This document shows, piece by piece, positions 24,613 to 39,865 of a stretch of DNA of 64,000 bases. The stretch covers positions 124,001 to 188,000 of the IMG/VR virus record IMGVR_UViG_3300010334_000023. The stretch is one strand, 5' to 3'. Position numbers and translations under genes: made by a program. Numbering within the stretch: position 1 is the first letter of the stretch; each line of letters starts with the position of its first letter. Below the pieces are notes generated by a model. That model saw only the letters and a program-made list of their open reading frames with translations, searched no databases and was not told the origin of the DNA.

Positions 24613-25209
24613 ATGCCGATGATTGACCGCAGCGATCAATGGATCCAAGGACACATAGTAATACGCGATTACGTGACCGGGGAAGTTTTAGTCGATAAGT
24701 CTAATGCTATCAACTACGAGAACTTTTCCATCAGTCTAGCACGCACGATCGCTAACAGGCCAGACAGCTGGATACAGGAAATGGTGTTTGGTAATGGCGC
24801 TGCTCAGGTCAGCGAGATAGGAACCATAACCTACCTGCCACCTAACGTGTTGGGGCAGACCGCGGAATTGTATAATCAGACTTATTATCAAGTGGTTGAC
24901 GATCAGAGCCCGTTGGATCTGAATCCCACACAGAACTACATCAGCACTGCGCACATAGACGGAACCTACTACACAGACGTGATAGTTACCTGCCTCTTGG
25001 ATCTGGGTCAACCTGCTGGACAAGAAGCATTTGACACTGCTACAAACATCGGTGGCACCTATGTTTTCAATGAACTTGGCCTAAAAGCTTACAGCGCCAA
25101 CGGTCCAAACACTGGACGATTGCTAACACATGTGGTATTCAGTCCAGTGCAAAAGAGTTTGAATAGGCAGATCCAGATAGTATATACTATAAGGATACAG
25201 ACGGTATGA
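24613..25209 (+). CDS. Baseplate / tail-fibre attachment structural protein
   Basis: VFNELGLK...LLTHVVFSPVQKSLNRQIQIVYTI motif; position in the structural operon. Confidence 0.6.
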   Translation: MPMIDRSDQWIQGHIVIRDYVTGEVLVDKSNAINYENFSISLARTIANRPDSWIQEMVFGNGAAQVSEIGTITYLPPNVLGQTAELYNQTYYQVVDDQSPLDLNPTQNYISTAHIDGTYYTDVIVTCLLDLGQPAGQEAFDTATNIGGTYVFNELGLKAYSANGPNTGRLLTHVVFSPVQKSLNRQIQIVYTIRIQTV

Positions 25210-25252
25210 TCTACGGTGCTAAATATGCTTACAATCATGGCAGGTGAACGAA

Positions 25253-26020
25253 ATGTCAGAGAACATTTATCAATTTAATGGTACGCTGTTGGTCAGCGTG
25301 CCGGATGGTGCGCTGAACACAAGCGCTGCACCAATCGCATTCCCGGGTAGAGGATACACTAGCTATGGTGCGCCAGTGCTGCAGAATACCCTGTGGACCA
25401 TGCAGAACTTTGCTGGCACGGTAGCTCCAACTCCGCTGCTCCAGGGCGTGGAATGGTACAACAGCAACACCAACGAGCTGCAGGTATACACTGGCAGCAC
25501 ATGGTCAGTGCTGTTCAAGGACAATCAAGATAACATGCCAGCTGCCAATAACTCATACGATCTCGGATCAAGCAGCAAGAAGTTTGCTGCTGTATACGCA
25601 ACCACTTTCAACGGCACTGCCACGCAGGCACTGTATGCTGACGTGGCAGAGCGCTACGCAGCTGATGCTGTGTTGGAAGTAGGTGATGTTGTTAGGCTTG
25701 GAGGAGAAGCTGAGATAACCCTGACCACAGTTGACTGTGATACCAACGTGTTTGGTGTCATATCAGACAAGCCAGCCTACAAGATGAACAGCGACGCTGG
25801 TACAGATAAGACACATCCATATGTGGCACTGCTGGGACGTACTCCCTGCAAGGTAGTAGGGCGCACAGCCAAAGGTGATCGCTTGGTAGCCAGCAGCATC
25901 CCAGGTGTGGCACGCGCAGCAGATGGTGGTGAGGATCCTCACAGCATCGTTGGACGTGCGCTAGCAGCCAAAGAAACCGAAGAAGTTGGTTTGGTAGAGA
26001 TAGTAATAGGACGAAGCTGA
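25253..26020 (+). CDS. Short tail-fibre-like protein with C-terminal intramolecular-chaperone-like domain
   Basis: ALYADVAERY...VFGVIS...VALLGRTPCKVVG...KGDRLVAS motif; CTAAATA at 25219-25225. Confidence 0.65.
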   Translation: MSENIYQFNGTLLVSVPDGALNTSAAPIAFPGRGYTSYGAPVLQNTLWTMQNFAGTVAPTPLLQGVEWYNSNTNELQVYTGSTWSVLFKDNQDNMPAANNSYDLGSSSKKFAAVYATTFNGTATQALYADVAERYAADAVLEVGDVVRLGGEAEITLTTVDCDTNVFGVISDKPAYKMNSDAGTDKTHPYVALLGRTPCKVVGRTAKGDRLVASSIPGVARAADGGEDPHSIVGRALAAKETEEVGLVEIVIGRS

Positions 26021-26976: not shown

Positions 26977-27005
26977 TTGACACTGTGAGCATTTGCAGCC
27001 ACAAT
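26977..27005 (+). promoter_or_regulatory. Sigma70-type promoter TTGACA-N17-CACAAT for the glycosyltransferase operon
   Basis: Consensus -35, 17-nt spacer, intergenic; GGAG RBS and ATG 27032 downstream. Confidence 0.55.
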
Positions 27006-27031
27006 CGCTAGATAAGCGATTGGAGATCAGC

Positions 27032-27388
27032 ATGGATGAAAGACTAGAGAAAGCCCTGGAATTCAGCAGGTATCGTATCAGCCTTTTCAATCGCAAAGAA
27101 GACCTCAAACTGAGGCTCAAGAACATGCTGCTTCATGCCACAGACGGTGGTATCTTCACCATTGATCAACAGCTCATCACCTTCGTAGAGATGTTGGTCA
27201 GCAAGGGTAGGATGCAGGCTGTGCTGCTTGATGACAACGGTAATCCGATTGAAATCGCTGATCTAGCTCAGTTTGCTGACGACATAATTGGCAAGTATTT
27301 TGAATCGACCAATCTCTATTATGCGGAATATGCCAAGCTTCGCAGTGCCCGCACGGTAAAGAGCATATACGAGTTCGTTGATGACTGA
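27032..27388 (+). CDS. Hypothetical phage protein, first gene of the GT operon
   Basis: GGAG RBS before ATG 27032; overlaps the next gene. Confidence 0.7.
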   Translation: MDERLEKALEFSRYRISLFNRKEDLKLRLKNMLLHATDGGIFTIDQQLITFVEMLVSKGRMQAVLLDDNGNPIEIADLAQFADDIIGKYFESTNLYYAEYAKLRSARTVKSIYEFVDD

Positions 27389-28289
27389 TTATCCCAGAGA
27401 ATTTAGGCTGGATCGCGGTTTCGTGATGTTTGCCTACAACAACTCCAACATAGACTACGCATCGCTGGCATTGGTAAATGCTCTGCTGATCAAGAAAAAC
27501 CTCAAGACCAATGCCGTGGCCCTGATAGCAGATCACAATGCTGTGTATCACCTGGAGTCGCTATACAACACTGAAGTCATCAGCAGGGCTTTTGATCGCA
27601 TCATCATTGACGAGCCCACGGACATCAATGTTGGCAAGCGCAGGTTCCATGATACTAGGTACACAGCGTTTACCGACGGCTATCGCAACACCAATCGCGC
27701 CAGTGTCTATGATTTAAGCCCTTTTGAAGAGACCATGCTGATAGACAGTGACTATCTCATGCTTGACTCTAGCTTTGACATGGTCTGGGGCAGTGTCGAG
27801 GGCATGATGTGCAATAGGCACACCAGAGACTTGGACCACGGTGTAGACAAGTTTGGCTTTGACAATCGCTTCAACGATATGAGCATACCGCTCTATTGGG
27901 CTACAGCAGTCTATTTCCGCAAGACTGACAGGAGCAGGTTGATATTTGAGCTTATGAACTTCATCAAGGAGAACTATGCCTATTATCAGTATCTCTATAG
28001 GTTCAATCACAGCGGCTACTTCCGCAATGACTATGCTCTGAGCATGGCACTGCACATGACCAACAATCTCATTGAGCATGACAACATATCAGCACTGCCA
28101 GTTGACCACATCATGTTCAGCATGGAAAACGATGAGATGCACGGTTTCAAGGATGGATGTTGCTTGATGACCAGTGAGCCCACGCAGGGTGATTTCCGTA
28201 TCCATAACGTTGACTACAACGTGCATGTGATGAACAAACGTGCTATACTGCGACTCAAGGATGACTTCATTGCCTACGCTCTCAGCTGA
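27381..28289 (+). CDS. GT-A fold glycosyltransferase (GT8-like)
   Basis: DxD motif in SPFEETMLIDSDY; YWATAVYFRK and FRNDYA; paralogous to the next gene. Confidence 0.7.
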   Translation: MTDYPREFRLDRGFVMFAYNNSNIDYASLALVNALLIKKNLKTNAVALIADHNAVYHLESLYNTEVISRAFDRIIIDEPTDINVGKRRFHDTRYTAFTDGYRNTNRASVYDLSPFEETMLIDSDYLMLDSSFDMVWGSVEGMMCNRHTRDLDHGVDKFGFDNRFNDMSIPLYWATAVYFRKTDRSRLIFELMNFIKENYAYYQYLYRFNHSGYFRNDYALSMALHMTNNLIEHDNISALPVDHIMFSMENDEMHGFKDGCCLMTSEPTQGDFRIHNVDYNVHVMNKRAILRLKDDFIAYALS

Positions 28290-29151
28290 CATCAACCATA
28301 GACCTCGCGGTTTCTTTACCTTCGCGCAGAACAACGAACGCACGGATTATCTGCGCATGGCCTATGCACTAGCCCTGAGCCTCAAGGTGTCGCAGCAGAG
28401 TGTGCCCTATCTCACTGTTGGCATAACGCCTGGCATGACAGTTCCAGATCAATATGCTTGGGCCTTTGACAATATCATAGAGATTCCTTGGGGAGACCAT
28501 GCGGCAGACAGCAGCTGGAAGCTGGAGAACGAGTGGAAGTCCATATACATGACGCCCTATGAAGAGACTATCAAGCTGGACTGTGACATGCTGTTTTTCA
28601 CAGATCTCGGTAGGATCTGGGATCAGCTGAGCCAAAGAGATTTCGTGATATGTAACCAAGTGTTGAACTACAAGTCAGACGTAATAACCAGCGACGTCTA
28701 TCGCAAGGTATTCACAGACAACCAGCTACCAAATGTCTACACGGCATTCATGTATTTCAAGAAGACCACAGAGACACATGAGATATTTGACTTAGCTAAG
28801 TTCGTTTTCAGGAACTGGGAAACCATGTTCCTGGAGACCATGAAACCAGAAAATCGGCCTAACTATGTCAGCACTGACGTGGTTTTTGCTCTGGTGCTCA
28901 AGCTGTTGGACCTGGACCAACACTGCTATACAGCACGAGCAATACCTACCTTCACGCACATGAAGAGCCAACTGCAGGGATGGGGCACAGGTATCACAGA
29001 AGACTGGACCAAGCACATGCCAGTGTTTTTCAATCCTAGATTGGAATGCAAGATAGGAAATCATCTGCAGTTCCATCCACTGCACTACCATATCAAGGGA
29101 TTCGTAACCGACGAGATATTGGAATATTATGAGCGAGCAGCAGGAAGATAA
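28261..29151 (+). CDS. GT-A fold glycosyltransferase (GT8-like)
   Basis: TPYEETIKLDCDM (DxD), VYTAFMYFKK, STDVVFA, FTHMK; exact start uncertain (28240 or 28261). Confidence 0.7.
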   Translation: MTSLPTLSADINHRPRGFFTFAQNNERTDYLRMAYALALSLKVSQQSVPYLTVGITPGMTVPDQYAWAFDNIIEIPWGDHAADSSWKLENEWKSIYMTPYEETIKLDCDMLFFTDLGRIWDQLSQRDFVICNQVLNYKSDVITSDVYRKVFTDNQLPNVYTAFMYFKKTTETHEIFDLAKFVFRNWETMFLETMKPENRPNYVSTDVVFALVLKLLDLDQHCYTARAIPTFTHMKSQLQGWGTGITEDWTKHMPVFFNPRLECKIGNHLQFHPLHYHIKGFVTDEILEYYERAAGR

Positions 29152-29686
29152 ACAGGCCTGGGTTTGGTATGACAGGGTTACCCTGCAGCTGAAGCATGTG
29201 AGCTTCAATCTGAATGGTCACCAAGGCAATGATCTGGAAAAGATGCCGATGCACTATGACAGCGCATTGGACATCGCCAACGGCAAGAGCAGGCTTTTTG
29301 AATACGAGCTGGTTGATGCGCAGGGAGAGCTAACTGTGCGTTACAAGAGGCACAAGATTCCTTTCAAGAAGTTCTGGCAACTGGTTGATCTCAATATAGA
29401 GAACAAGTTTGATGGATATTTCAACGACGCTGAATCTGCTCGCAGTCCAGTGCAGATATCAGATCTTTCTCCTGCTGGCTTTACCGTTGGTGTGCGTGAT
29501 ATGGTACGCAACATAGTGTTCTATATCACCATGAAGAACGATCCAAACTATCTCATCAAAAAGATCGATCTCTATCCACTTGCCGAGGATGCTGCTAGCA
29601 CCACTGGTATCTTCGTGCCAGTTGATCTTGATGAGCCGTATAGCATATATGTGAAGTATGACGAAGTGAGGTACGATGCTACATGA
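29129..29686 (+). CDS. Hypothetical protein within the GT operon
   Basis: Intact ORF overlapping both neighbours. Confidence 0.6.
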   Translation: MSEQQEDKQAWVWYDRVTLQLKHVSFNLNGHQGNDLEKMPMHYDSALDIANGKSRLFEYELVDAQGELTVRYKRHKIPFKKFWQLVDLNIENKFDGYFNDAESARSPVQISDLSPAGFTVGVRDMVRNIVFYITMKNDPNYLIKKIDLYPLAEDAASTTGIFVPVDLDEPYSIYVKYDEVRYDAT

Positions 29687-30581
29687 GATGAACGAATTCG
29701 ACTTTGTGTTCCTAAGCTATGATGAACCCAATGCCGAGATTCTCTATGCTGAGTTGGTGAACAAGGTACCGTGGGCCAAGCGAGTTCATGGTGTGCGCGG
29801 TTTTGACTCAGCACACAGGGCCTGTGCTGACATAGCTGATACTGATTTCTTCGTGACTGTGGACGGCGATAATCGCGTGCATGACAGCTTCCTCAACACC
29901 AAGATAGAGATAAACAATGGGCAAGAAGACCATGCATGGACATGGGCAGGTCGCAATCACGTTAATGGTTTGGTCTATGGCAATGGTGGACTGAAGCTGT
30001 GGAGCAAACAGTTTGTGCGCAGCATGAACAGCCACGAGAACAGCAACAGTGATGCTGGCAAGGTTGACTTCTGTTGGAACATGAGATACCACGAAGTGTT
30101 TGGCACACACAGCACCAGCATGATCAATGCCAGCCCCTATCAGGCCTGGCGAGCTGGTTATCGCGAAGGCGTGAAGATGAGCCTAGAGACTGGACGCAAG
30201 GTTCCATATCAGGATTTTAGCAGGAAGATCTGGATCTATAATCTCCACAAGCTGCTGATCTGGTGCAGTGTTGGAGCTGACGTGGAGAACGGCATATGGA
30301 GCATGCTGGGTGCTAGGCAGGGCGCACACGACTGCAATCTCACAGATGACGATCACACCAAGATCAGTGACTATGGTTGGTTTGAAGAGAAATGGCACAG
30401 CACCAAGGACTGTGATCCGCAAGCACAGTGCCTCATGCTAGGGCAGCTGCTGAGGCAGAAACTTGGCATAGAGATAGCTGACTTAGATGCTGATCAAAGC
30501 AGATTCCACAAGCGCATATACATAAATCCACCCAGGCCCATGGTCAGCTATGAGCAGATCAAACATCTATCGGCAGTCTGA
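29676..30581 (+). CDS. Glycosyltransferase-like protein (SYDEPN / VDGDN family), paralog 1
   Basis: FLSYDEPNAE...RVHGVRGFDSAHRACA...FVTVDGDN (GT-A-like DxD); YGNGGLKLW; WRAGYREGVKM. Confidence 0.65.
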   Translation: MLHEMNEFDFVFLSYDEPNAEILYAELVNKVPWAKRVHGVRGFDSAHRACADIADTDFFVTVDGDNRVHDSFLNTKIEINNGQEDHAWTWAGRNHVNGLVYGNGGLKLWSKQFVRSMNSHENSNSDAGKVDFCWNMRYHEVFGTHSTSMINASPYQAWRAGYREGVKMSLETGRKVPYQDFSRKIWIYNLHKLLIWCSVGADVENGIWSMLGARQGAHDCNLTDDDHTKISDYGWFEEKWHSTKDCDPQAQCLMLGQLLRQKLGIEIADLDADQSRFHKRIYINPPRPMVSYEQIKHLSAV

Positions 30582-32428
30582 TGTTTGACATCTTTTTCGT
30601 GAGCCGACATCCCAGCGATCGTTCACTTCACTCTGAGTTCTGCAGGCGTTTTCCGGCTGCTATGCTGCTGCGAGGTCAGGACAACGTCTGTGATGTGATC
30701 AACTCTGCGAGGACTCGCAGCCTAACCAGCATGTATTGGTTGGTAACTGATGATGCGATTCTGCCAGATGAAATGGATCTAACTTGGAAACCAGAAACCT
30801 GGGACAGCCACTATCCGCACCATTGGCCAACAGCAGACCAACTTGACGAGTCTGGTAAAGAATTCTCTGGGGCCTATCTCATGCCAAGGTCTTATAGACC
30901 AACCGCTGAAGAGCTATCATCTGGCATACTGCGCGAAGTCAAACATATGACAGGTCATCTGACAGTCAGACCCTATGACATTGTCTTAGCCAGCCGGCAT
31001 AGCAAGAACTATCAGGCATTTGAGGATTTTGCTCTGCGATATCCCAAAGCCAACTATCTGCCAGACCAGACCAGCATTGAATCAGCAGTGGCTGAAAGCA
31101 AGGAGATCTGCCGTACACGCATGTATTGGTTGATCACCGATGATGTGTTCCTACCTGATGAGCTTGATCTCAGCTGGAGACCTCCGGTCTGGGATCGGAT
31201 CTATACACATGTTTGGCCAACGCAGCCTACTTCGGATCCGCAATCATGCGGGTCGTCTGGTGTTTACCTCATTCCATGCAGCGTTGAACGAGATTTCCTC
31301 GATCAGTGCAAGCATGTACCAGCTCCGAGCTGTTCAGTGATACCCTATGATCGCATCATGAGCCTCAGCACCACATCTGATCCCTGTGACAAGGTAGTGC
31401 ATAACAACGATCTTTTTGATGCATGCGTACAAGCCAAGGAGCTAGCTGTCACGGAGATGCATTGGCTGGCGCTGGGAGACATAAACATATTGCCAGATTT
31501 TGATCTCAGCTGGAGACCAGCAGAATGGGACCGTGACTATGTTCACATATGGCCAACCATAGGTCTGGACGGTCAGATAACCTATGAACAGGAAGGTATC
31601 TATCTCATACCAGGTGATCACACGCCTCGAGCTTCTAGGTCTGGAAGCTATCTAGGTCGCAGCAAGACCATGGATCAGCCTGCTGCTATACAGCTGCCAT
31701 TTGACATATTCTTCATCAGCTACGACGAAAGCTATGCTGAAGAAAACTGGCAGGATCTGGTTGAGCGATATCCTAGGGCCAAGAGGGTCCATGGAATCAA
31801 GGGTATACACAACGCACATCGATGCTGCGCCGGTCAGTCGCGTACCAGCATGTTCTATACCGTTGATGCAGACACGGTGTGCAGTTCCGGCTGGGATTTC
31901 AGCTATCGTCCTCCAAGGCACGACAGGGATTATCTACATGTTTGGTACAGTGAGAATCCCGTGAATGGTCTCTGCTATGGCTGGGGCAGCATCAAGCTGT
32001 GGCCCAAGATGGCAGTGCTGGAGTTTGATCAAAACTGGTTGGATTTCACTACTACAGTGGGCAACATCAAGGTAATACCAGAGACCGTAGCCGAGACCAG
32101 ATATAACAGGGATCAGCTCACTACTTGGCGCAGCGCCTTCCGTGAGAGCGTGAAGCTATGCCAGAACGTGGCCATGGGTGAAACTGGAGAAAGCCTGGAT
32201 AGGCTGCTGGTATGGCTGAACGCTGACAGTGCCGCAGACTGGTCTGATGACAGCAGGCAGGGTGCTGCCGATGGCCTGAGATTCTATCAGGAGTCGCAGG
32301 ACTCGTCTGACACACCTCTGACACTGATCAATGATTTTGATTGGCTCGCAGATAGATTCAATAATCGCATTAGAGACCTGGACGACTTTGATCGAGATGA
32401 TCTGCTGGACCTGCTGGGAACGGATTGA
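30581..32428 (+). CDS. Multidomain glycosyltransferase-like protein: three degenerate repeats plus one complete SYDE/VDAD domain
   Basis: Three copies of T.M[YH]WL...D...LP...DL.W.P..WD..Y.H.WPT, then FISYDESYAE...RVHGIKGIHNAH...TVDAD...WRSAFRE. Confidence 0.65.
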   Translation: MFDIFFVSRHPSDRSLHSEFCRRFPAAMLLRGQDNVCDVINSARTRSLTSMYWLVTDDAILPDEMDLTWKPETWDSHYPHHWPTADQLDESGKEFSGAYLMPRSYRPTAEELSSGILREVKHMTGHLTVRPYDIVLASRHSKNYQAFEDFALRYPKANYLPDQTSIESAVAESKEICRTRMYWLITDDVFLPDELDLSWRPPVWDRIYTHVWPTQPTSDPQSCGSSGVYLIPCSVERDFLDQCKHVPAPSCSVIPYDRIMSLSTTSDPCDKVVHNNDLFDACVQAKELAVTEMHWLALGDINILPDFDLSWRPAEWDRDYVHIWPTIGLDGQITYEQEGIYLIPGDHTPRASRSGSYLGRSKTMDQPAAIQLPFDIFFISYDESYAEENWQDLVERYPRAKRVHGIKGIHNAHRCCAGQSRTSMFYTVDADTVCSSGWDFSYRPPRHDRDYLHVWYSENPVNGLCYGWGSIKLWPKMAVLEFDQNWLDFTTTVGNIKVIPETVAETRYNRDQLTTWRSAFRESVKLCQNVAMGETGESLDRLLVWLNADSAADWSDDSRQGAADGLRFYQESQDSSDTPLTLINDFDWLADRFNNRIRDLDDFDRDDLLDLLGTD

Positions 32429-32429
32429 G

Positions 32430-33119
32430 ATGTATGACATAGTTTTTATCAGCTACGAAGAATCAAATGCTGCTGCTAATTGGCAGCTGCTCAAGGACAG
32501 ATTTCCTGCTGCCAAGAGGTTGCATGGCATCACAGGGCTTCATCAAGCACACATCACGGCTGCTAACATGGCCCAGACTGACATGTTTTATGTGGTAGAT
32601 GGTGATGCTGTGATTGAACCCGACTTTGTTTTTGACCACGTGGTTCCGGAACATCAACTGGATCATGTGCATGTGTTCCGTGCTAGGAATCCAATCAATG
32701 ACCTAGTCTACGGCTACGGTGCTGTAAAGCTACTGCCAGTGGCCGAGGTCAAGCGATTGGTGGAGAGAGACTTCAAACCGGACATGACCAGCAGCATCAA
32801 TCGCAAGTACAAGATCATACATCAGCTATCAAATGTCACAGCGTTTAACACTGATCCCTACAACACTTGGCGCAGCGCTTTCAGAGAATGTGCCAAGCTG
32901 GCCAGCGGCGTCATAGATGGGCAGGTTAACATCGAGACAGAGCAGAGACTAGAGATTTGGTGCACCAAAGGCAGTGGCAGGGACTATGGCTATTGGTGTC
33001 TGCTTGGTGCGCAGGCCGGCAGGCAGTTTGGCCTGGACAGCCGAGGCACTGATCAGCTGATGAAGATCAACGATTGGACATGGCTTCGCCAGAGATACGA
33101 GGAGAGCGGACTGAAATGA
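32430..33119 (+). CDS. Glycosyltransferase-like protein (SYEE / VDGD family), paralog 3
   Basis: MYDIVFISYEESNA...RLHGITGLHQAH...VVDGDA...YGYGAVKL...WRSAFRECAKL. Confidence 0.65.
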   Translation: MYDIVFISYEESNAAANWQLLKDRFPAAKRLHGITGLHQAHITAANMAQTDMFYVVDGDAVIEPDFVFDHVVPEHQLDHVHVFRARNPINDLVYGYGAVKLLPVAEVKRLVERDFKPDMTSSINRKYKIIHQLSNVTAFNTDPYNTWRSAFRECAKLASGVIDGQVNIETEQRLEIWCTKGSGRDYGYWCLLGAQAGRQFGLDSRGTDQLMKINDWTWLRQRYEESGLK

Positions 33120-33985
33120 GCGAGTATTGGCCCAGAGATATAGATGCTTTCTACATCAGCTATGACGAACCAAACTGCGAAGACAACTGGGCCAGGGTGC
33201 TGGACATGCTACCTCAAGCCAAGCGCACGCACGGAGTCAAGGGATTTGATGCTGCACACAAGGCCTGTGCCGAGGCCAGCCAGACAGAGAGATTCCTCAC
33301 CATTGATGGTGATAACTGGCTGTTGGCTGACGGATTAGACACAAAGCTAGACGACACTGGAATGGAAGACGTGGTCTTCAGCTTCAAGAGCAGGAATGCG
33401 GTCAATGGTCTTGAATATGGTAACGGAGGTCTAAAATGCTGGCGCAGAGATGTGTTGCTGGCTAGCAACACACATGAGAGCAGCGACAACACAGACTTCT
33501 GCTGGGATCTGCGCTACTATCAAGTTGATGTGTTGAGCAGCATTGGCGTTAACAACGCCACGCCTTACCAGGCTTGGCGAGCCGGTTATCGCGAAGGCGT
33601 GAAGATGAGCTATGTGAATGGCAAACCCATGTCTGATCCAATCGCCGATCGCAAGCTGATAGCTCACAGTAACCATAGCAAGCTGCAGATATGGATGACC
33701 TTGGGCAGGGACGTGACCAACGGAGCATGGGCCATGCTGGGAGCAAGGCAAGGCTTCTGCGATCTCTATAGCGGTACCATAGGCAACACTGTGATCAATG
33801 ACTATGATTGGTTCGCAGAGAAATGGAAGAAGATCCAACACCTCAACACAGATGCTGCGCTATCTCAGCATGCTCGCAGACTTCGAGACGAGTTTGATTT
33901 TTTCGTTCCGGAACTTGATCAACTGACCAGCCAGTGGTTCAAGAAAACCTATGTGCATCCGCAGCGACGAGGTCTGATGCTATGA
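33116..33985 (+). CDS. Glycosyltransferase-like protein (SYDEPN / IDGDN family), paralog 4
   Basis: YISYDEPNCE...HGVKGFDAAHKACA...TIDGDN...YGNGGLKCW...WRAGYREGVKM; ATGA overlap with upstream stop. Confidence 0.65.
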   Translation: MSEYWPRDIDAFYISYDEPNCEDNWARVLDMLPQAKRTHGVKGFDAAHKACAEASQTERFLTIDGDNWLLADGLDTKLDDTGMEDVVFSFKSRNAVNGLEYGNGGLKCWRRDVLLASNTHESSDNTDFCWDLRYYQVDVLSSIGVNNATPYQAWRAGYREGVKMSYVNGKPMSDPIADRKLIAHSNHSKLQIWMTLGRDVTNGAWAMLGARQGFCDLYSGTIGNTVINDYDWFAEKWKKIQHLNTDAALSQHARRLRDEFDFFVPELDQLTSQWFKKTYVHPQRRGLML

Positions 33986-34743
33986 TCAAGTCTCCTCCTA
34001 GGAGATTGATACGATCGCTGCTGGGACACCTAGACCAGGAGGGTCTGTCTCTGCCTCTGTTGCGGTTCATGCTAGGCAACTTTGACAGCTATGATGATCA
34101 CTTGGTCATGCTCAAGCAGGTCATGGCAGTGTCGCAGCTGGATACTGAGCTGGTTGGCAAAGATGCATGGAGCGAAGGTCAGCTGCTGAGCAAGCATTGG
34201 CTGTGCGAACAGCTATCAAACCTGGACAAGAACCTCGGAGAGATATGGATAGCCTGTGGATGGATAGGATCTCTGGCTTTGATGATCGACTGTTATAGAC
34301 CACATCTGCGTTTCAAGAGCCTGCGCAGCTTTGATATTGACAGTCGCTGCGCTGATCTAGCTGACGCGCTTAACAAGCGCATGCTGCTGGATGATTGGCG
34401 TTTCAAGGCCAGCACTGCTGACGTGAACGATCTCACCTACGATGACCACCTGTGGCTCACCAGCAGGTCACAGAATAGGACTGAGCGCATGGTTGGAACC
34501 GCAGACACCGTGATCAATACCAGCTGTGAACATCTAGCTGATTTTGACTTTTGGTTTGGTCGCATACCAACCGGAAAGCTCGTGGTGCTTCAATGTAGCA
34601 ATCACGACAGCTATGCCGGACATGTCAATCACATGGACAGCATGACTGAGCTGGCCATGAGAGCTCGATGCCGCCGCATCATGTACAAGGGCACGCTGGA
34701 CTGCGGGCCCTACCAGCGCCACATGTTGATAGGAGTGAAATGA
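33982..34743 (+). CDS. Class I SAM-dependent methyltransferase-like protein
   Basis: IACGWIG (motif I-like), RSFDID, DTVINTSCEH, GKLVVLQ; ATGA overlap. Confidence 0.65.
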   Translation: MIKSPPRRLIRSLLGHLDQEGLSLPLLRFMLGNFDSYDDHLVMLKQVMAVSQLDTELVGKDAWSEGQLLSKHWLCEQLSNLDKNLGEIWIACGWIGSLALMIDCYRPHLRFKSLRSFDIDSRCADLADALNKRMLLDDWRFKASTADVNDLTYDDHLWLTSRSQNRTERMVGTADTVINTSCEHLADFDFWFGRIPTGKLVVLQCSNHDSYAGHVNHMDSMTELAMRARCRRIMYKGTLDCGPYQRHMLIGVK

Positions 34744-36020
34744 ACATGCGATTGAACGACAAGGAACTGCTGGTCAAGATCAAGAACGATAACCGTTTGC
34801 TTGAATTTAGGCATCTACTGACAGCTGAGGACCGAGCAACATTTGCAGACGTGTACAAGTGGTCGCCTGCTCTCATCGGCATATTAGCCAGTGACCATAG
34901 CTTCTTCGCACTGCTCAACAGGTTAAATCCAAACGATCGCAAAGCGATTGGGTTAGTCTGCGTTTGGTCTCCAGAGTTGATAGGAATATTGGCCAGCGAC
35001 CAGAGCGGAATCTTTGCGCTGCTGAAAAGGTTAGATCAGACCGATCGCAAAGCGGTTGGGTCAGTCTGTGCTTGGTCTCCGGAGTTGATAGGAATATTAG
35101 CCAGCGATTACAGCATCTTTGTGCTGCTTAACAAGCTAGATCAGACCGATCGCAGAGCTCTAGCGTCAGTCTGTGATTGGTCTTCCGCACTAATTGGTAT
35201 CATGACCAAGAACGAACATGCACCGCTATCTTGGTTGAATAAGCTCAGCCGAAGCGAACTTGATGGTTGCCGAGATGTCTGGAACTGGCCCATTTATATT
35301 CTAGACAGGCTCTATGTTGAACCTCAGCACATCTTGCCCTTCTATTACATGTGGGACCTAGTTGCTGATCATGCCGAGTTCATCAAGAACTATTTCCAAA
35401 TAAACGATAACCAACTATATGACAAAAACCACATGATAGATGCTTGGTCGCGAGGACAGGTCAACAGCAAGGCTTGGCTATGCGCCACGGCTGCTATACT
35501 TGGCATCAAACTTGGCAAAACCTGGGTACTCTGCGGATGGCTAGGAACGTTGAGCTATTTTATGTTGGTACGTAGGCAACAGCTGGGAATCACACACATA
35601 CGTAGCTTTGACATAAACCCCGATTGCTGCCAACTAGCTGATATACTAAACAAGAATTTTGTCAAGGATGGGTGGAAGTTCAAAGCCACAACACTTGATG
35701 TCAACAGTCTGTCATATGACAATTTTTGTTATCAGACAGTGAAGCACGACGGTACCTTGATAAATGCTCTCGGATCAGCTGATACCATCATTAACACCAG
35801 CTGCGATCACATGGGAGAAGATAAGACCTGGTGGGATCGCATACCAAATGGTAAGTTGGTAATACTACAGAACAATGATTGGCATGAGAATGACCAACAC
35901 AACAATAGCGTGAAGGATTTAAGTGAGTTCAAGAGACATTATCCAATGAGCGAATTGCTTTATGAAGGGGAACTAGACTGTATATTGTATACGAGATTCA
36001 TGCTCATAGGACGCAAATGA
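34740..36020 (+). CDS. Class I methyltransferase-like paralog with N-terminal tandem helical repeats
   Basis: VLCGWLG, RSFDIN, DTIINTSCDH, GKLVILQ; AGGAG RBS and ATGA overlap at 34740. Confidence 0.65.
   Translation: MNMRLNDKELLVKIKNDNRLLEFRHLLTAEDRATFADVYKWSPALIGILASDHSFFALLNRLNPNDRKAIGLVCVWSPELIGILASDQSGIFALLKRLDQTDRKAVGSVCAWSPELIGILASDYSIFVLLNKLDQTDRRALASVCDWSSALIGIMTKNEHAPLSWLNKLSRSELDGCRDVWNWPIYILDRLYVEPQHILPFYYMWDLVADHAEFIKNYFQINDNQLYDKNHMIDAWSRGQVNSKAWLCATAAILGIKLGKTWVLCGWLGTLSYFMLVRRQQLGITHIRSFDINPDCCQLADILNKNFVKDGWKFKATTLDVNSLSYDNFCYQTVKHDGTLINALGSADTIINTSCDHMGEDKTWWDRIPNGKLVILQNNDWHENDQHNNSVKDLSEFKRHYPMSELLYEGELDCILYTRFMLIGRK
34860..35205 (+). repeat. Intragenic tandem repeat of 105-108 bp (35-36 aa), about three copies
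   Basis: Units start at 34905, 35013 and 35118: F.LL.[RK]L...DR[KR]A...VC.WS..LIGI. Confidence 0.85.
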
Positions 36021-36262
36021 TCACAGACCTAACTCTGCTATCAACAAGACAGCTGCAGACCGAAGCAGCTCGTGCCCTGTCAGCTGGTGATGGTTTTGGG
36101 AATCATGACTTGGTGAGATTCAACAAGGCAGCACATCATGACAGCCATGCTTGGTATCGCGCGGTGATAGAATGGTACGTGAGCGTTCACGGTGATCTGC
36201 CCAGCAGGGTTGGTCCAGGCATGACAGTGAAGCTGCTGGTGGAGGATGAACATGATCTATGA
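36017..36262 (+). CDS. Small hypothetical protein
   Basis: ATGA overlap upstream; overlaps the radical-SAM gene downstream. Confidence 0.6.
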   Translation: MITDLTLLSTRQLQTEAARALSAGDGFGNHDLVRFNKAAHHDSHAWYRAVIEWYVSVHGDLPSRVGPGMTVKLLVEDEHDL

Positions 36263-37352
36263 TTACTCTGAGATTACTAGCGTGCACCTCGAACTTACCA
36301 GCAAGTGCAATGCCAGCTGTCCCATGTGCGCACGCAACAAGTTTGGCGGGCCAGAGAATGAGTTCCTGCCTCAAGCAGAACTGAGCCTGACTGATATACA
36401 GCGCATCATGCCCGAGGCATTCGTGAGGCAGCTGAGCAGGCTCTACATGTGCGGCAACTATGGAGATCCCATCGTGGCCAATGACATGCTGGAAGTCTAT
36501 CAGTGGCTGCGCAAGGTCAATCCCAGCATCAAGCTGGGACTGCACACCAATGGTGGTGCCAGGACTCCCACATGGTGGAGCAATCTGGGCATTGTGCTCA
36601 GTGCCAAGGGCGATTACGTGAAGTTTGGCATAGATGGCTTGGAGGATACCAACCACATCTATAGGCGCGGTACCAACTGGTCCAAGATCATGGACAATGC
36701 CAAGGCCTTCATAGCTGCAGGCGGTATTGCCCAGTGGGAATACATCGTGTTCAAGCACAACGAACATCAGGTGGATGAAGCCCGTGCGCTGAGCGAGCAG
36801 CTGGGCTTCGCACAGTTCCGCACCAAGAAGACAGGTCGCTTCTTCAGCAACACTAGGTTACAAGGCAAGGACAGCCAAGAGGTATGGAACCGCAATGGCA
36901 TGGTGGAGTATCTCTTGGAGAAACCAACCAACGAGCTCTATCACAATGACAGCTTGATCAAGGAACAGAGCCTGGTGGACCGCTTTGGCAGCATGCAGGC
37001 CTACGTGGATCAAACCTGCGTGAAGTGCAAGGTTGGCGAGGAAAAGAGCCTGTACATCTCAGCAGAAGGTCTGGCATTTCCTTGCTGTTGGACGGCTAAC
37101 CAGCTGTATGTTTGGTATTGGCCCCACAAGCAGAGCGAGATGTGGACGCTGCTGGATCATGACACTCACAACGTGAACGCCCTGGAAAACACACTAGAAT
37201 CTATAATAAATGGTCCATATTTCAATAAGATAGCTGATAGCTGGTCAAAACCCAGCATCAGTGATGGCAAGCTGAGAGTATGTGCCAAAACCTGCGGAAC
37301 TGGGTTCGATCAGTTCGCTAGCCAATTCACGGAAGCTGTAAATAGATCATGA
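36246..37352 (+). CDS. Radical SAM protein with C-terminal SPASM/twitch-like Cys domain
   Basis: CNASCPMC (CX3CX2C), GNYGDP, HTNGG, GIDGL; C-terminal CKV...YISAEG.AFPCC...CAKTC. Confidence 0.9.
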   Translation: MNMIYDYSEITSVHLELTSKCNASCPMCARNKFGGPENEFLPQAELSLTDIQRIMPEAFVRQLSRLYMCGNYGDPIVANDMLEVYQWLRKVNPSIKLGLHTNGGARTPTWWSNLGIVLSAKGDYVKFGIDGLEDTNHIYRRGTNWSKIMDNAKAFIAAGGIAQWEYIVFKHNEHQVDEARALSEQLGFAQFRTKKTGRFFSNTRLQGKDSQEVWNRNGMVEYLLEKPTNELYHNDSLIKEQSLVDRFGSMQAYVDQTCVKCKVGEEKSLYISAEGLAFPCCWTANQLYVWYWPHKQSEMWTLLDHDTHNVNALENTLESIINGPYFNKIADSWSKPSISDGKLRVCAKTCGTGFDQFASQFTEAVNRS

Positions 37353-38743
37353 CCAACCAATTACCAAGTGACACTTTCTGCGCTCTACCCTGGGTGCATC
37401 TCAGCAGCCGACCAGATGGAACCATGCGCGTCTGCTGCACAGCCAACGCCAGCAGCGTGCAGGATCCAGACAGCACCAAGAAGCTGAGCGGTGGACAGAT
37501 AGGCGTGCTGCGCACTGCTGATGGCACTCCTGCTAACCTCAACAACACCACGCTGATGGACGCATGGAACAATGATTACATGCGCAACGTGCGCAAGATG
37601 ATGCTCAGGGGCGAACAGCCTCCCAGCTGTGTGAAATGCTACAAGGAAGAATCTTCTGGTGTGCAGAGCAAGCGCAACTGGGAGACTCGCTACTGGGTTG
37701 AGCAGCTGGGATTGGATGACATCATAGGTGATACCACCGAGGATGGCGAAGTCAGCCCGAGAATACGCTATCTTGATCTGCGCCTGGGCAGCAAGTGCCA
37801 GCTGGCCTGCGTGATGTGTAGCCCGCATGACAGCAGCGGTTGGATCAAGGAATGGACAGAAATCTATCCACAGATAACCAATGACCGACTCAAGCAGAGC
37901 TGGGGCTGGGCTGACAAAGGCAAGCAGCACGGCGCTAGCTACAACTGGCATCTCAACAATCCTGTTTTCTGGGATCAGCTCTACGATCAGATACCTCACA
38001 TGAAGCAGCTGTATTTCGCAGGCGGTGAGAGCACCATCATCGAAGAACACTACACGCTGCTGGAGGAGGTCATACGCCGCGGCTATGCCCCGCAGATAGA
38101 GCTTAGGTACAACAGCAATGCAGTTGAGCTGCCACAGCGTCTGTTCGACTGCTGGAGCCAGTTCCGAGAAGTCAAGTTCCACTTCAGCGTGGACTGCATA
38201 GGTGCCAAGAATGAATATATTCGCTATCCCAGCAACTGGGATAACATGGTCACTCACATGCATCTGTTGGATCAGACTCCCAACATCATAGTGACCACTG
38301 CTGTCACGGTAATGGCACTCAACATCTATTACCTGCCAGACGTGATCAAGTGGAAGCTCACGCAAGGGTTCGTGAAGTTCAACGAATGGCCCAGCGGCGG
38401 TGGCATGATCAACTGGCATCTAGCCTATTGGCCTCCTCAGCTCAACGTCAAGGTGCTGCCCAAGTGGGCCAAACAGATGGTGCGAGCCAAGTTTGAAGAG
38501 CTGTTCGTTTGGTTGGAAGATAATTGGCAGCTGTGCACCGGACTGCCAGAAGGCATGGACAAACACACCGTGCTGAACACTGGATACGGTATAAAGAGAT
38601 TACGCAGCCTATTGGATTTCATGGACAAGGAAGATTGGAGCGAGCGCATGCCTGAGCTCAGGGAATGGATACGAGTCCTTGACAAGACACGCGGATTGGA
38701 TTTCAAAGCCACTTTCCCTGAGATGAGTGGGCTCTTAGATTGA
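37349..38743 (+). CDS. Radical SAM protein with N-terminal twitch/SPASM-like domain
   Basis: N-terminal FCALPW...DG.MRVCC...CVKC; core CQLACVMC, FAGGE, YNSN, FSVD. Confidence 0.9.
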   Translation: MTNQLPSDTFCALPWVHLSSRPDGTMRVCCTANASSVQDPDSTKKLSGGQIGVLRTADGTPANLNNTTLMDAWNNDYMRNVRKMMLRGEQPPSCVKCYKEESSGVQSKRNWETRYWVEQLGLDDIIGDTTEDGEVSPRIRYLDLRLGSKCQLACVMCSPHDSSGWIKEWTEIYPQITNDRLKQSWGWADKGKQHGASYNWHLNNPVFWDQLYDQIPHMKQLYFAGGESTIIEEHYTLLEEVIRRGYAPQIELRYNSNAVELPQRLFDCWSQFREVKFHFSVDCIGAKNEYIRYPSNWDNMVTHMHLLDQTPNIIVTTAVTVMALNIYYLPDVIKWKLTQGFVKFNEWPSGGGMINWHLAYWPPQLNVKVLPKWAKQMVRAKFEELFVWLEDNWQLCTGLPEGMDKHTVLNTGYGIKRLRSLLDFMDKEDWSERMPELREWIRVLDKTRGLDFKATFPEMSGLLD

Positions 38744-39213: not shown

Positions 39214-39864
39214 ATGACAGTCAAGCTCATAGCCATATCACAACCGACCATTGACGAATGCACCACAGCTGAAGAGCTGGTGGCATACTGTGCCAGGGTC
39301 TCAAACCCAGCCAACCAAGACAACCATGGTACCAGCGCCAAGCTGATACGATACCTCATAAAAAACGCACATTGGTCTCCCTTGGAGATGGTACACATGA
39401 CCATGGAGATCAACACCACACGTGACATAGCAAGGCAGATACTGCGACATCGCAGCTTCAGCTTCCAGGAGTTCAGCCAGCGCTATGCCGACCCTACCAA
39501 GAGCCTGGGTTTCGTAACCAGAGAAGCACGCCTGCAGGATGCCAAGAACCGGCAAAACAGCATCGAAGTTGACGATGCTGAACTGGCTGATCTGTGGACT
39601 GGCATGCAGGAGTTAGCCATAGAAAATGCGCAGAGGCAGTATACCAAAGCAATCAACATGGGTATTGCCAAGGAACAGGCCCGTGCGCTGCTGCCAGAAG
39701 GTCTAACAGAGAGCCGTATCTATATGGCAGGCAGCCTCCGCAGCTGGGTACACTACTGTGATCTGCGCCGTGCTAACGGTACCCAGAAAGAACATCGCGA
39801 GATAGCAGAAGCCTGCTGGAGCATCGTGGTTGATCAATTCCCCATGCTAGGACAAGGAGATTGA
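39214..39864 (+). CDS. thyX: Flavin-dependent thymidylate synthase
   Basis: HWSPLE, RQILRHRSFSFQEFSQRY (RHRxxxxxxxS signature), EQARALLP, TQKEHR. Confidence 0.96.
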   Translation: MTVKLIAISQPTIDECTTAEELVAYCARVSNPANQDNHGTSAKLIRYLIKNAHWSPLEMVHMTMEINTTRDIARQILRHRSFSFQEFSQRYADPTKSLGFVTREARLQDAKNRQNSIEVDDAELADLWTGMQELAIENAQRQYTKAINMGIAKEQARALLPEGLTESRIYMAGSLRSWVHYCDLRRANGTQKEHREIAEACWSIVVDQFPMLGQGD

Positions 39865-39865
39865 C

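What the first reader, a model, noticed from the sequence alone, without database searches (positions are those of the whole stretch)
29676..33985. Four-member paralog family with SYDE...HG..G...AH...DxD...WR..[FY]RE motifs
Seen: four consecutive genes share an N-terminal GT-A-like half and a C-terminal WR[AS][GA][YF]RE..K helical region. They fall into two subtypes (YGNGGLK/WRAGYREG and YG[WY]G.[IV]KL/WRSAFRE) arranged A-B-B-A. Inference: an unclassified phage glycosyltransferase family that may act as hetero-oligomers or add successive sugars.
Basis: partly seen in the sequence, partly recalled or inferred. Interest (0 to 1): 0.6.

Follow-up and report, generated by a model that had tools for sequence, protein, structure and literature searches.

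The report
Paired uncharacterised glycosyltransferase-like genes, jumbo phage
Four neighbouring genes of an uncultured giant phage are two pairs of an abundant, unnamed enzyme family that looks like a distant cousin of family-2 sugar transferases and sits in a conserved sugar-building gene module next to the tail genes; what it puts sugars on is still unknown.

Summary
Four consecutive + strand genes (29676-33985) are paralogs in the order A-B-B-A, and each keeps all 26 family-conserved positions.

They have no Pfam, NCBIfam, PHROGs or PDB sequence match, yet more than 7,900 relatives exist in metagenomes. A confident model shows a GT-A (nucleotide-sugar transferase) N-domain plus a helical C-domain of its own. 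A profile comparison ties the family weakly to GT2, with DGD aligned on the GT2 DxD.

New points:
- **Second gene:** it carries three dead copies of the N-half before its catalytic module. Relatives carry 0 to about 8 such copies.
- **Ancestral unit:** one A plus one B, seen in almost all of 80 viral loci and fused into one protein in two loci.
- **Two pairs of different ancestry:** the outer-left A with the inner-right B are phage-type. The last A groups with Bdellovibrionota chromosomes, where it follows or is fused to GT2 genes.
- **Module:** two glycogenin-like GT8 genes, A, B, a methyltransferase-like gene and several N_Twi radical SAM genes. Relatives often add nucleotide-sugar dehydrogenases or epimerases.

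Best reading: soluble Leloir glycosyltransferases building a tailored glycan. The acceptor, possibly a virion protein, is only inferred. The heteromer prediction gave no answer.

The parts
27378..28289 (+). GT8-like (glycogenin-like) putative glycosyltransferase, copy a; conserved first member of the module
   Evidence: Profile of this family (A7, 29 sequences) hits glycogenin-1/2 in the PDB at E 5e-6 over about the first 105 positions, including the DxD strand. No Pfam hit by single sequences. Found upstream of A in most viral loci and as RsoM2USA ORF353.
28240..29151 (+). GT8-like putative glycosyltransferase, copy b
   Evidence: Same family as copy a (A7). 51% identical to RsoM2USA ORF352. 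Weak phrog_1903 and NF045582 hits.
29129..29686 (+). 185-aa protein of unknown function between the GT8-like genes and A
   Evidence: ORF with no family hit. A gene of like size holds this position in RsoM2USA (ORF351).
29676..30581 (+). A1 (P0001, 301 aa): phage-type A subfamily; GT-A N-domain (res 2-167) plus helical C-domain
   Evidence: AF2 model pLDDT 91.4, pTM 0.89. GT-A fold matches. More than 7,900 homologs, none named. Falls in the main phage A clade. GAGG lies 6 nt before the ATG.
30581..31696 (+). B1 N-terminal array: three degenerate copies (res 1-125, 126-255, 256-372) of the N-terminal half-domain, predicted catalytically dead
   Evidence: Repeats aligned. HMM domain hits. Of the 26 conserved positions they keep only D65, plus S14 and P32 in repeats 1 and 2 and a few chance identities in repeat 3. 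Each is modelled as a beta-alpha-beta half-domain.
31697..32428 (+). B1 catalytic module (P0002 res 373-615): complete B-type module
   Evidence: All 26 conserved positions kept. B HMM 313 bits. Lies outside the main phage B clade, with Bdellovibrionota-type B sequences, on weak support.
32430..33119 (+). B2 (P0003 res 34-262, 229 aa): phage-type B subfamily
   Evidence: 51-53% identical to the single B of many phage loci. Falls in the main B clade. Sub-threshold Pfam GT2 hits over the DxD region (E 0.07-0.09).
33116..33985 (+). A2 (P0004 res 15-303, 289 aa): A subfamily of the Bdellovibrionota type
   Evidence: 44% identical to A1. Sits in a 23-tip clade (support 97) that, apart from the window's three closest kin, holds only MAG sequences, 17 of 19 labelled Bdellovibrionota. 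Three of these lie on 0.8-3 Mb chromosome contigs.
33934..34743 (+). Class I SAM-methyltransferase-like protein, copy 1 (conserved module member 'mt')
   Evidence: Family alignment A6 with invariant GW.G.L, SFDID and NTSCEH motifs. No Pfam or PDB sequence hit. Nearest named Atlas clusters carry Methyltransf_31, PCMT or MTS. RsoM2USA ORF347 is a homolog.
34668..36020 (+). Methyltransferase-like protein, copy 2, with an N-terminal array of 36-aa repeats
   Evidence: C-terminal 200 aa are homologous to copy 1. DNA tandem repeat 34881-35183, period 108, 2.9 copies.
36017..36262 (+). 81-aa conserved small protein between mt and the radical SAM genes
   Evidence: 51% identical homolog at the same position in L011. 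No family hit.
36246..37352 (+). Radical SAM / SPASM protein
   Evidence: PF04055 E 1.4e-8 and SPASM. 52-54% identical to neighbours of A in Bdellovibrionota-labelled MAG contigs.
37349..38743 (+). N_Twi_rSAM (NF033640) radical SAM protein with an N-terminal Cys-rich twitch domain
   Evidence: 411 bits against a cut-off of 170. CxxxCxxC at C150/C154/C157. Present in 1 to about 6 paralogs in nearly every related locus.

Best explanation
The four genes encode soluble, metal-dependent (DxD) Leloir-type glycosyltransferases of an unnamed family that is a remote offshoot of GT2.

Each catalytic module has two parts. The first is a trimmed GT-A nucleotide-sugar domain carrying SYDE, HG..G..AH, DGD and N..N..YG.GG.K. 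The second is a family-specific helical domain carrying WR..[FY]RE..K. Together they presumably form the acceptor side of the active site.

The family split long ago into subfamilies A and B. These almost always occur together, one of each, and are sometimes fused. I therefore take A and B to do two different, coupled steps, either as successive transfers or as a heteromer.

In this phage lineage they belong to a conserved cytoplasmic assembly line placed just after the baseplate and tail-fibre genes. It comprises two glycogenin-like GT8 enzymes, A, B, a SAM methyltransferase-like protein and several viperin/MoaA-like N_Twi radical SAM enzymes. Relatives often add a UDP-glucose/GDP-mannose dehydrogenase, an epimerase/dehydratase or a carbamoyltransferase. 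The product would be a short, heavily tailored glycan made from nucleotide sugars.

The window carries two A/B pairs, one phage-type and one Bdellovibrionota-type, so it probably adds more or different sugars than its relatives. The dead half-domain array on B1 most likely acts as a scaffold or acceptor-binding extension.

Shown: paralogy, fold, conserved motifs, remote GT2 link, pairing, fusions and gene context. Inferred: enzymatic activity, donor, and above all the acceptor. My preferred acceptor is a virion (tail or fibre) protein, by analogy with chlorovirus, mimivirus and mycobacteriophage virion glycosylation.
For: Fold:
- P0001 model pLDDT 91.4.
- Residues 2-167 match GT-A and nucleotide-sugar folds: PBCV-1 A64R Z 9.2, B4GALNT1 8.9, POMGNT1 8.6, and chlorella hyaluronan synthase 8.5 over residues 1-274.
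- Foldseek matches HAS, A64R, BcsA, RmlT, SunS and WrtF at E 2e-4 to 1e-3.

Homology:
- hhalign of the A+B profile against 11 Pfam-GT2 proteins gives Prob 77%, E 2e-5, with DGD aligned on DxD.
- P0003 has sub-threshold PF00535/PF13641 hits on the same region.

Catalytic integrity:
- All 26 conserved positions are kept in all four modules.
- No membrane segment.

Coupling of A and B:
- A and B are sister clades, each with support 99.
- One A plus one B occur in nearly all of 80 viral loci and in RsoM2USA (ORF350/348).
- A-B fusion proteins occur in L009 (516 aa) and L027 (528 aa).

Sugar context:
- A GT2-A fusion (581 aa) and a GT2-GT2-GT2-A operon occur in Bdellovibrionota chromosomes.
- The L041 cluster holds three GT2 genes.
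- The GT8-like neighbours hit glycogenin.
- UDPG/GDP-Man dehydrogenase occurs in 23 of 80 viral loci and an epimerase/GDP-Man dehydratase in 10 of 80.
- Dehydrogenase plus carbamoyltransferase lie beside the 8-repeat B.
- RsoM2USA ORF358 is a GDP-mannose 4,6-dehydratase near the module.

Position:
- The module follows the baseplate wedge gene, a 3701-aa ORF and a tail-fibre-like gene.

Precedent for dead GT-A-like domains: the best Foldseek matches of the P0002 model are the multi-GT-A proteins K4CP and LH3.
Against: - No enzymatic or structural experiment exists for any member.
- The structural scores are middling. Z about 9 ties with MobA/IspD nucleotidyltransferases, and TM is about 0.3 against whole GT chains.
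- The hhalign probability is only 77%.
- No member passes a curated GT HMM threshold.
- The held 216 kb of this phage (42% complete) has none of the four nucleotide-sugar enzyme families searched, so the donor must come from the host or from the missing part.
- Nothing identifies the acceptor. Adjacency to tail genes may be mere conserved synteny of this lineage, and the bacterial homologs are not near any structural protein.
- XacN1, in which virion glycoproteins were reported, has no detectable A homolog.
- The pocket geometry was not examined.
Confidence: 0.55

Rival explanations
1. Host-surface remodelling. The module makes or alters an outer polysaccharide (O-antigen or capsule-like) of the infected cell, for example to block superinfection, rather than decorating the virion.
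For: Iyer et al. 2021 propose exactly this for sugar-enzyme and paralogous-GTase clusters of jumbo cyanophages (PMC7824862). The bacterial homologs sit in multi-GT2 operons typical of cell-glycan synthesis.
Against: No flippase, polymerase, ABC exporter, initiating phosphoglycosyl transferase or membrane protein was seen in the module in the window or in the examined loci. All four proteins are soluble. The module is a conserved core next to tail genes in about 80 diverse phage contigs, not sporadic as expected for exclusion cassettes.
Confidence: 0.15
2. DNA hypermodification. A and B glycosylate a modified base (such as 5hmC or 5hmU) in phage DNA to evade restriction, like the T-even glucosyltransferases or the JGT-like GT-A enzymes of Pyle et al.
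For: GT-A-fold DNA glycosyltransferases are known in phages (bioRxiv 10.1101/2023.12.21.572611). Nucleotide-metabolism genes (ThyX, a P-loop kinase, a cytidylyltransferase-like gene) lie 5-7 kb downstream. N_Twi rSAM proteins resemble the nucleotide-acting viperin, MoaA and QueE.
Against: No ThyA-type hydroxymethylase or C5-methyltransferase, and no Tet/JBP hit (the control for that search was silent), in the 216 kb held. The genome is only 42% complete. The motif set differs from the R...DDD...EDY/F of the DNA GT-A group. Homologs occur in bacterial chromosomes inside GT2 operons. The module is adjacent to tail genes, not replication genes.
Confidence: 0.1
3. Glycosylated peptide or small-molecule pathway. 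The radical SAM/SPASM enzymes and the GT-like proteins mature a ribosomal peptide (glycocin-like) or a metabolite, with a small conserved ORF (36017-36262 or 26993-27388) as the substrate.
For: SPASM/twitch rSAM enzymes are typical RiPP maturases (NCBIfam side hits). SunS and ThuS glycocin S-glycosyltransferases are among the fold matches. An 81-aa conserved ORF sits between the mt and rSAM genes.
Against: The 81-aa protein has no Cys and no leader/core look. N_Twi rSAM proteins score best against viperin and MoaA rather than peptide maturases. Nucleotide-sugar enzymes are frequent neighbours. No protease or exporter was seen.
Confidence: 0.1
4. Not glycosyltransferases. The proteins are nucleotidyltransferases or another kind of NDP/NMP-utilising enzyme on the same Rossmann-like fold (MobA/IspD-like).
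For: The top VIA-align match is MobA (Z 9.3), and many IspD and cytidylyltransferase chains score 7.5-9.
Against: The glycine-rich N-terminal loop of that group, as I recall it, is absent: strand 1 is followed by SYDEPNAE. An invariant DxD follows the third strand, as in GT-A enzymes. Profile and Pfam leads point to GT2. Fusion and adjacency are to GT2 domains.
Confidence: 0.08

Closest known systems
GT2 glycosyltransferases (Pfam PF00535 clan; e.g. SpsA, TarS/TarP, RmlT, GtrB, hyaluronan and cellulose synthases)
   Same: GT-A fold. The DxD lies at the end of the same strand. The G..A(H/R)..G helix before it aligns in the profile comparison. The longest structural alignments, to hyaluronan synthase and BcsA, run on into the C-terminal helices. 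Members are fused or adjacent to GT2 genes in bacteria.
   Different: Fails every curated GT2 HMM (13 bits against 23-27). One beta-alpha unit shorter at the N-terminus. Its own invariant motifs (SYDE, N..N..YG.GG.K, WR..[FY]RE..K) and its own helical C-domain of about 130 aa. Soluble.
PBCV-1 A64R domain 1 and other giant-virus virion-glycan GT-A enzymes (Mimivirus R655, R699)
   Same: A virus-encoded, soluble, DxD GT-A enzyme. A64R is the joint-best structural match (Z 9.2, Foldseek prob 1.00). A64R, as I recall, is likewise combined with a methyltransferase domain in a virus-encoded glycan pathway.
   Different: 13-14% identity and no sequence-level relation. A64R has no helical C-domain of this type. 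The acceptor (capsid glycan) is known there and unknown here.
Mycobacteriophage virion glycosylation glycosyltransferases (Freeman et al. 2023, cited in PMC12619734; Che8 GT among BFVD matches)
   Same: Phage GT genes placed beside structural genes. A GT-A fold match to the Che8 GT (rank 45).
   Different: Only a weak fold match (E 3e-3). Different phage lineage. No radical SAM or methyltransferase partners there, to my knowledge.
Multi-GT-A proteins with inactive domains: human LH3 (accessory domain), E. coli K4 chondroitin polymerase
   Same: Tandem GT-A-type domains in one chain. These are the best Foldseek matches for the whole P0002 model. LH3 has a non-catalytic GT-A-like domain (my knowledge).
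   Different: Here only the N-terminal half of the domain is repeated, 0 to about 8 times, always N-terminal to one live module. TM-scores are low (0.15-0.18).
JGT-like GT-A DNA glycosyltransferases of phages (Pyle et al., bioRxiv 10.1101/2023.12.21.572611)
   Same: A phage-encoded GT-A fold.
   Different: Different motif set (R...DDD...EDY/F). Those genes sit next to 5mYOX, C5-MT or ThyS genes, none of which was found here.

Membership tests
GT-A fold superfamily (nucleotide-diphospho-sugar transferases) | Single Rossmann-like alpha/beta/alpha domain with a central mixed sheet | tested here: met
   AF2 model pLDDT 91. VIA-align Z 8-9.3 to many GT-A and NDP-sugar transferase chains over residues 2-167. 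Foldseek prob 0.96-1.00.
GT-A fold superfamily (nucleotide-diphospho-sugar transferases) | DxD (metal/diphosphate-binding) motif at the C-terminal end of a core strand | tested here: met
   D63 and D65 are invariant in 26 A+B sequences. They directly follow strand 58-63 and align on the GT2 DxD.
GT-A fold superfamily (nucleotide-diphospho-sugar transferases) | Binds a nucleotide sugar and transfers the sugar | not testable with these tools
   No coordinates, docking or assay available.
GT2 (Pfam PF00535 / PF13641 and relatives) | Scores above the curated gathering threshold of a GT2 HMM | tested here: not met
   Best is P0003 at 13.2-13.7 bits against 23.3-27. The other three have no hit. So this is filed as GT2-related, not as a GT2 member.
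GT2 (Pfam PF00535 / PF13641 and relatives) | Profile-level homology to bona fide GT2 domains | tested here: inconclusive
   hhalign Prob 77%, E 2e-5, 135 columns. Suggestive but below the usual 90-95% level.
CAZy classification (any GT family) | Match to a CAZy/dbCAN family model | not testable with these tools
   No CAZy or dbCAN library on hand.
GT8 / glycogenin-like | Profile similarity to GT8 enzymes | tested here: not met
   The A+B profile against the neighbouring GT8-like family A7 gives Prob 0.5%. A7 itself hits glycogenin at E 5e-6, whereas the A profile found no glycosyltransferase chain in the PDB.
JGT-like DNA glycosyltransferases (GT-A class of Pyle et al.) | R...DDD...EDY/F active-site motifs, and a neighbourhood with 5mYOX/C5-MT or a ThyA-like hydroxymethylase | tested here: not met
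   The motifs here are SYDE/DGD/YG.GG.K/WR..FRE. No PF00303, PF00145 or PF12851 hit in the 216 kb held. Caveats: the genome is 42% complete and the PF12851 control was silent.
MobA/IspD-type nucleotidyltransferases | Glycine-rich NTP-binding loop after strand 1 | tested here: not met
   Strand 1 is followed by the invariant S-Y-D/E-E-x-N, with no G-x-G-x-R loop. The fold score alone ties with that of GT-A enzymes. The loop signature itself is from my knowledge.
NF033640 N_Twi_rSAM (neighbour gene 37349-38743, not the four paralogs) | Score above the curated cut-off; CxxxCxxC radical SAM motif | tested here: met
   411 bits against 170. C150/C154/C157 are invariant.

The most novel reading that the evidence does not exclude
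The module is a self-contained, phage-encoded protein-glycosylation machine. Glycogenin-like GT8 enzymes prime a virion (fibre or tail) protein. An obligate A/B heteromer of a new GT2-derived family extends the glycan with sugars remodelled by a battery of viperin-like radical SAM enzymes. The variable array of dead half-domains on B (0 to about 8 copies) acts as a ruler or docking scaffold that sets where, or how far, the glycan is built. The second A/B pair was exchanged with predatory Bdellovibrionota.
Probability: 0.12. Interest if true: 0.75.

Novelty: new variant of a known kind. Interest (0 to 1): 0.5.

Why it matters
If the enzymes are active, this is a large family with no entry in Pfam, NCBIfam or PHROGs. 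It has more than 7,900 sequence clusters at 90% identity and occurs in at least 591 viral contigs. It forms a near-universal core module of a widespread lineage of aquatic jumbo phages.

It would add a new branch to the GT-A glycosyltransferases, with a conserved two-subunit logic (A plus B) and an unusual pseudo-domain array. It would also point to an unexplored glycan chemistry in phages, with radical SAM-tailored, methylated and possibly carbamoylated sugars.

That chemistry could bear on virion stability, receptor binding or immune and defence evasion.

A cultured handle exists: Ralstonia phage RsoM2USA, ORF347-354.

Tried and rejected
- **Family libraries.** Pfam, PHROGs and NCBIfam scans of the four proteins gave nothing above threshold.
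- **PDB by sequence.** The A profile gave only noise (ankyrin, cofilin).
- **Phage records.** Megablast of the region found no match. tblastn found only RsoM2USA.
- **A+B complex prediction.** P0001 with P0003:34-262, each with its own alignment, returned 'no answer' (ipSAE 0.01 and 0.00). I use it neither for nor against binding.
- **Neighbour families.** The methyltransferase-like family has no Pfam hit and no PDB sequence hit. Only the Atlas feature search gives a class I methyltransferase lead. Single-sequence PDB searches of the N_Twi rSAM and GT8-like proteins were blank.
- **Literature.** Nothing found for NF033640/N_Twi_rSAM, and nothing characterising this family. The 'moraphage' paper reports four core putative GT orthogroups, but I could not link them to these genes.
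- **Bdellovibrionota core gene?** Rejected. Only about 4 of 121 sampled genomes have strong hits.
- **Recent tandem duplication as the origin of A-B-B-A?** Rejected. A1 and A2 are 44% identical and fall in different subclades.
- **Not run.** The search of protein representatives was skipped because it is costly and carries no names, and relatives were already plentiful. The reads tools were not needed for the question.


Full report
**Setting.**
- The window is bases 124001-188000 of a 216,498-bp IMG/VR virus contig, estimated 42% complete. It is therefore part of a very large phage genome.
- The nearest isolate is the 344-kb Ralstonia jumbo phage RsoM2USA, a relative of XacN1.
- Upstream of the finding lie a baseplate wedge gene (9964-13368, phrog_10646), a 3701-aa ORF (13361-24466), a conserved phage protein of unknown function (24613-25209, phrog_11259) and a protein with a tail-fibre-like C-terminus (25244-26020).
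- Downstream lie radical SAM genes, ThyX, a P-loop kinase and a cytidylyltransferase-like gene.

**Observation.**
- Four tightly packed + strand genes occupy 29676-33985.
- A search of the whole record with the first protein finds exactly these four places, at E 2.5e-75, 4.2e-32 and 2.4e-25 for the three others.
- Likely true starts are 32430 for gene 3 and 33116 for gene 4. That gives a 1-nt gap and a 4-nt overlap with the preceding genes. A GAGG precedes the first ATG.
- Gene 2 is composite. Residues 1-125, 126-255 and 256-372 are three copies of the N-terminal half only.
- The three repeats have lost nearly all of the 26 positions conserved in the family. They keep D65, and repeats 1 and 2 also keep S14 and P32. 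All four full modules keep all 26.
- None of the four proteins has a membrane-like segment.

**What the proteins are.**
- No Pfam, PHROGs or NCBIfam family reaches threshold. The only lead is two sub-threshold GT2 hits on P0003 over the DxD region.
- The word-based protein search scored 7,987 relatives among 8,000 candidates (its cap). None has a Pfam domain or an informative name.
- An AlphaFold2 model of P0001, built on 33 sequences, is confident (pLDDT 91.4, pTM 0.89).
- Residues 2-167 form a GT-A / nucleotide-diphospho-sugar transferase fold. VIA-align gives Z 9.3 to MobA, 9.2 to PBCV-1 A64R, 8.9 to B4GALNT1, 8.6 to POMGNT1, and 8.5 to chlorella hyaluronan synthase over residues 1-274.
- Foldseek lists hyaluronan synthase, A64R, BcsA, RmlT, SunS and WrtF at E 2e-4 to 1e-3. 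These scores are middling. They show a fold, not a function.
- Residues 168-301 are a helical domain without a clear counterpart.
- In BFVD the only strong matches are two uncharacterised multi-domain proteins of uncultured phages. In the ESM Atlas the nearest models are viral clusters, two named only 'hypothetical protein' and one auto-named 'Glycosyltransferase 2-like'.
- A profile-profile comparison of 26 A+B sequences with 11 proteins that do pass Pfam GT2 gives Prob 77%, E 2e-5 over 135 columns. It places DGD on the GT2 DxD and HGVKG..AH on the GT2 G..AR..G helix.
- I therefore file the family as a remote GT2 relative, not as a GT2 member.

**A and B are an old, coupled pair.**
- In a FastTree of 189 catalytic modules from 128 loci, A (98 tips) and B (91 tips) are separate clades, each with support 99.
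- In 80 viral contigs found with the B profile (591 or more exist), the order is almost always GT8-like, GT8-like, A, 0-5 radical SAM genes, B, then methyltransferase-like and further radical SAM genes. Nearly all have one A and one B.
- RsoM2USA has the same set: ORF354-347, with A = ORF350 and B = ORF348.
- In two loci, A and B are fused into one protein: L009, 516 aa, and L027, 528 aa.
- This is good evidence for functional coupling. It does not say whether they bind each other or act in turn. The complex prediction returned no answer, and I do not use it.

**The window has two pairs.**
- Only the window and its three closest kin (L054-L056) show A-B(repeats)-B-A.
- A1 and B2 fall in the main phage clades.
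- A2 falls in a 23-tip clade (support 97). Apart from the window's three closest kin, that clade holds only MAG sequences, 17 of 19 labelled Bdellovibrionota.
- B1 lies outside the main B clade together with Bdellovibrionota-type B sequences. Support for this placement is weak, at 41.
- The window's radical SAM genes (36246-38743) are 52-59% identical to neighbours of A in MAG contigs labelled Bdellovibrionota (Bacteriovoracaceae, Halobacteriovoraceae, Bdellovibrionales/Bdellovibrionia).
- The arrangement is therefore a canonical phage pair plus a second pair of different ancestry, not a recent tandem quadruplication.

**Not phage-only.**
- The genome scan found 48 loci. Many are MAG contigs that carry the whole phage module with tail-fibre-like genes. 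They are probably misbinned phage DNA.
- Others are true chromosomes. On a 3.04-Mb Bdellovibrionales contig, beside ftsK, dnaB and ppk, the A module is the C-terminal half of a 581-aa protein whose N-half is a Pfam GT2 domain. Two more GT2 genes precede it.
- On 0.4-0.9-Mb contigs the order dnaB-GT2-GT2-GT2-A is conserved.
- The gene is patchy in that phylum: about 4 of 121 sampled genomes have strong hits.

**Sugar context.**
- The two upstream 303-aa proteins belong to a family whose profile hits glycogenin (GT8) at E 5e-6.
- The 269- and 450-aa downstream proteins share a domain with class I methyltransferase-like motifs. Their nearest named Atlas clusters are methyltransferases.
- The 464-aa protein is a clear NF033640 N_Twi radical SAM enzyme (411 bits). 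Side hits of its paralogs are to viperin and MoaA.
- Among the commonest other neighbours in the 80 viral loci are a UDP-glucose/GDP-mannose dehydrogenase (23 loci), an epimerase/GDP-mannose dehydratase (10 loci), further radical SAM genes (29 and 14 loci) and a QueC/Asn-synthase-like ATPase (12 loci).
- A relative whose B protein has about 8 repeats sits after a dehydrogenase, five radical SAM genes and a carbamoyltransferase.
- RsoM2USA has a GDP-mannose 4,6-dehydratase a few genes away.
- The held part of this phage itself has none of the four nucleotide-sugar enzyme families searched.

**The repeat array.**
- B proteins come with 0, 1, 2, 3 or about 8 N-terminal half-domain copies: 389 aa, about 480 aa, about 610 aa and about 1010-1018 aa for 1, 2, 3 and about 8 copies.
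- The P0002 model (pLDDT 84, pTM 0.68) shows each copy as a beta-alpha-beta half-domain before a complete GT-A plus helical module.
- Its best Foldseek matches are multi-GT-A proteins, K4 chondroitin polymerase and LH3, at low TM.
- A scaffold or acceptor-docking role is my inference only.

**Mechanism and rivals.**
- Most likely the four proteins are soluble DxD-dependent glycosyltransferases acting in coupled A/B steps within a nucleotide-sugar-based, radical SAM- and methyl-tailored glycan pathway.
- The acceptor is unknown. I favour a virion protein for three reasons: the module's constant place after the tail and fibre genes, the glycogenin-like (protein-priming) partners, and the precedents in chloroviruses, mimivirus and mycobacteriophages.
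- Rivals are host-surface glycan remodelling, DNA base glycosylation (no hydroxymethylase, C5-methyltransferase or Tet/JBP hit, but the genome is incomplete and the Tet/JBP control was silent), a glycosylated peptide pathway, and a non-GT nucleotidyltransferase.

**Verdict.** The thing is a new, abundant and uncharacterised variant within the GT-A glycosyltransferase kind, and is of moderate interest.

Noticed in passing
window 13361-24466 (+): A single 3701-aa ORF directly after the baseplate wedge gene (9964-13368). It is presumably a giant fibre or structural protein. RsoM2USA has a 2541-aa 'structural protein' at the matching place (ORF361).
   Followed up: no
window 34881-35183 (inside 34668-36020): The second methyltransferase-like gene carries an N-terminal tandem array: a 108-bp period, 2.9 copies, 81% matches. 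This gives 36-aa repeats (WSPELIGILASD...LL.RL.Q.DRKA). The first copy of the gene lacks them.
   Followed up: partly
window 36246-38743; loci L054-L133, L006-L053: N_Twi_rSAM (NF033640) radical SAM genes are greatly expanded in this phage lineage, with up to 5-6 paralogs in one locus, always around the A/B genes. No paper found in the library searched describes a function for this family.
   Followed up: partly
L006-L053 (genome contigs): Contigs binned as Rickettsiales, Verrucomicrobia, Pacearchaeota, Neomarinimicrobiota, Legionellales, Bifidobacterium and others carry the complete phage module plus tail-fibre-like genes. Some are 330-490 kb long. They look like jumbo-phage contigs misbinned into MAGs.
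   Followed up: partly
L009:1584-3134 (-), L027:3051-4637 (+): Natural A-B fusion proteins of 516 and 528 aa.
   Followed up: yes
L047:7170-8915 (+) and L046, L030, L039: Bdellovibrionota chromosomes have a conserved dnaB-GT2-GT2-GT2-A operon, fused as GT2-A in L047. A second, B-like copy lies elsewhere in the same genome (G001:C2:603619-604320).
   Followed up: partly
window 39214-42153 (+): ThyX (PF02511), an APS-kinase-like P-loop kinase, a cytidylyltransferase-like protein and a YHYH-domain protein follow the module. Whether they belong to it is unknown.
   Followed up: no
G000:C1:32698-33078 (-), 202528-202785 (+), 203562-203855 (+): Three canonical Pfam GT2 genes elsewhere in the same phage record, outside the window.
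   Followed up: no
L134:8454-9968 (+): A NodU/CmcH-type carbamoyltransferase directly precedes the 8-repeat B protein in a related 97-kb contig. This hints at carbamoylated sugars.
   Followed up: no
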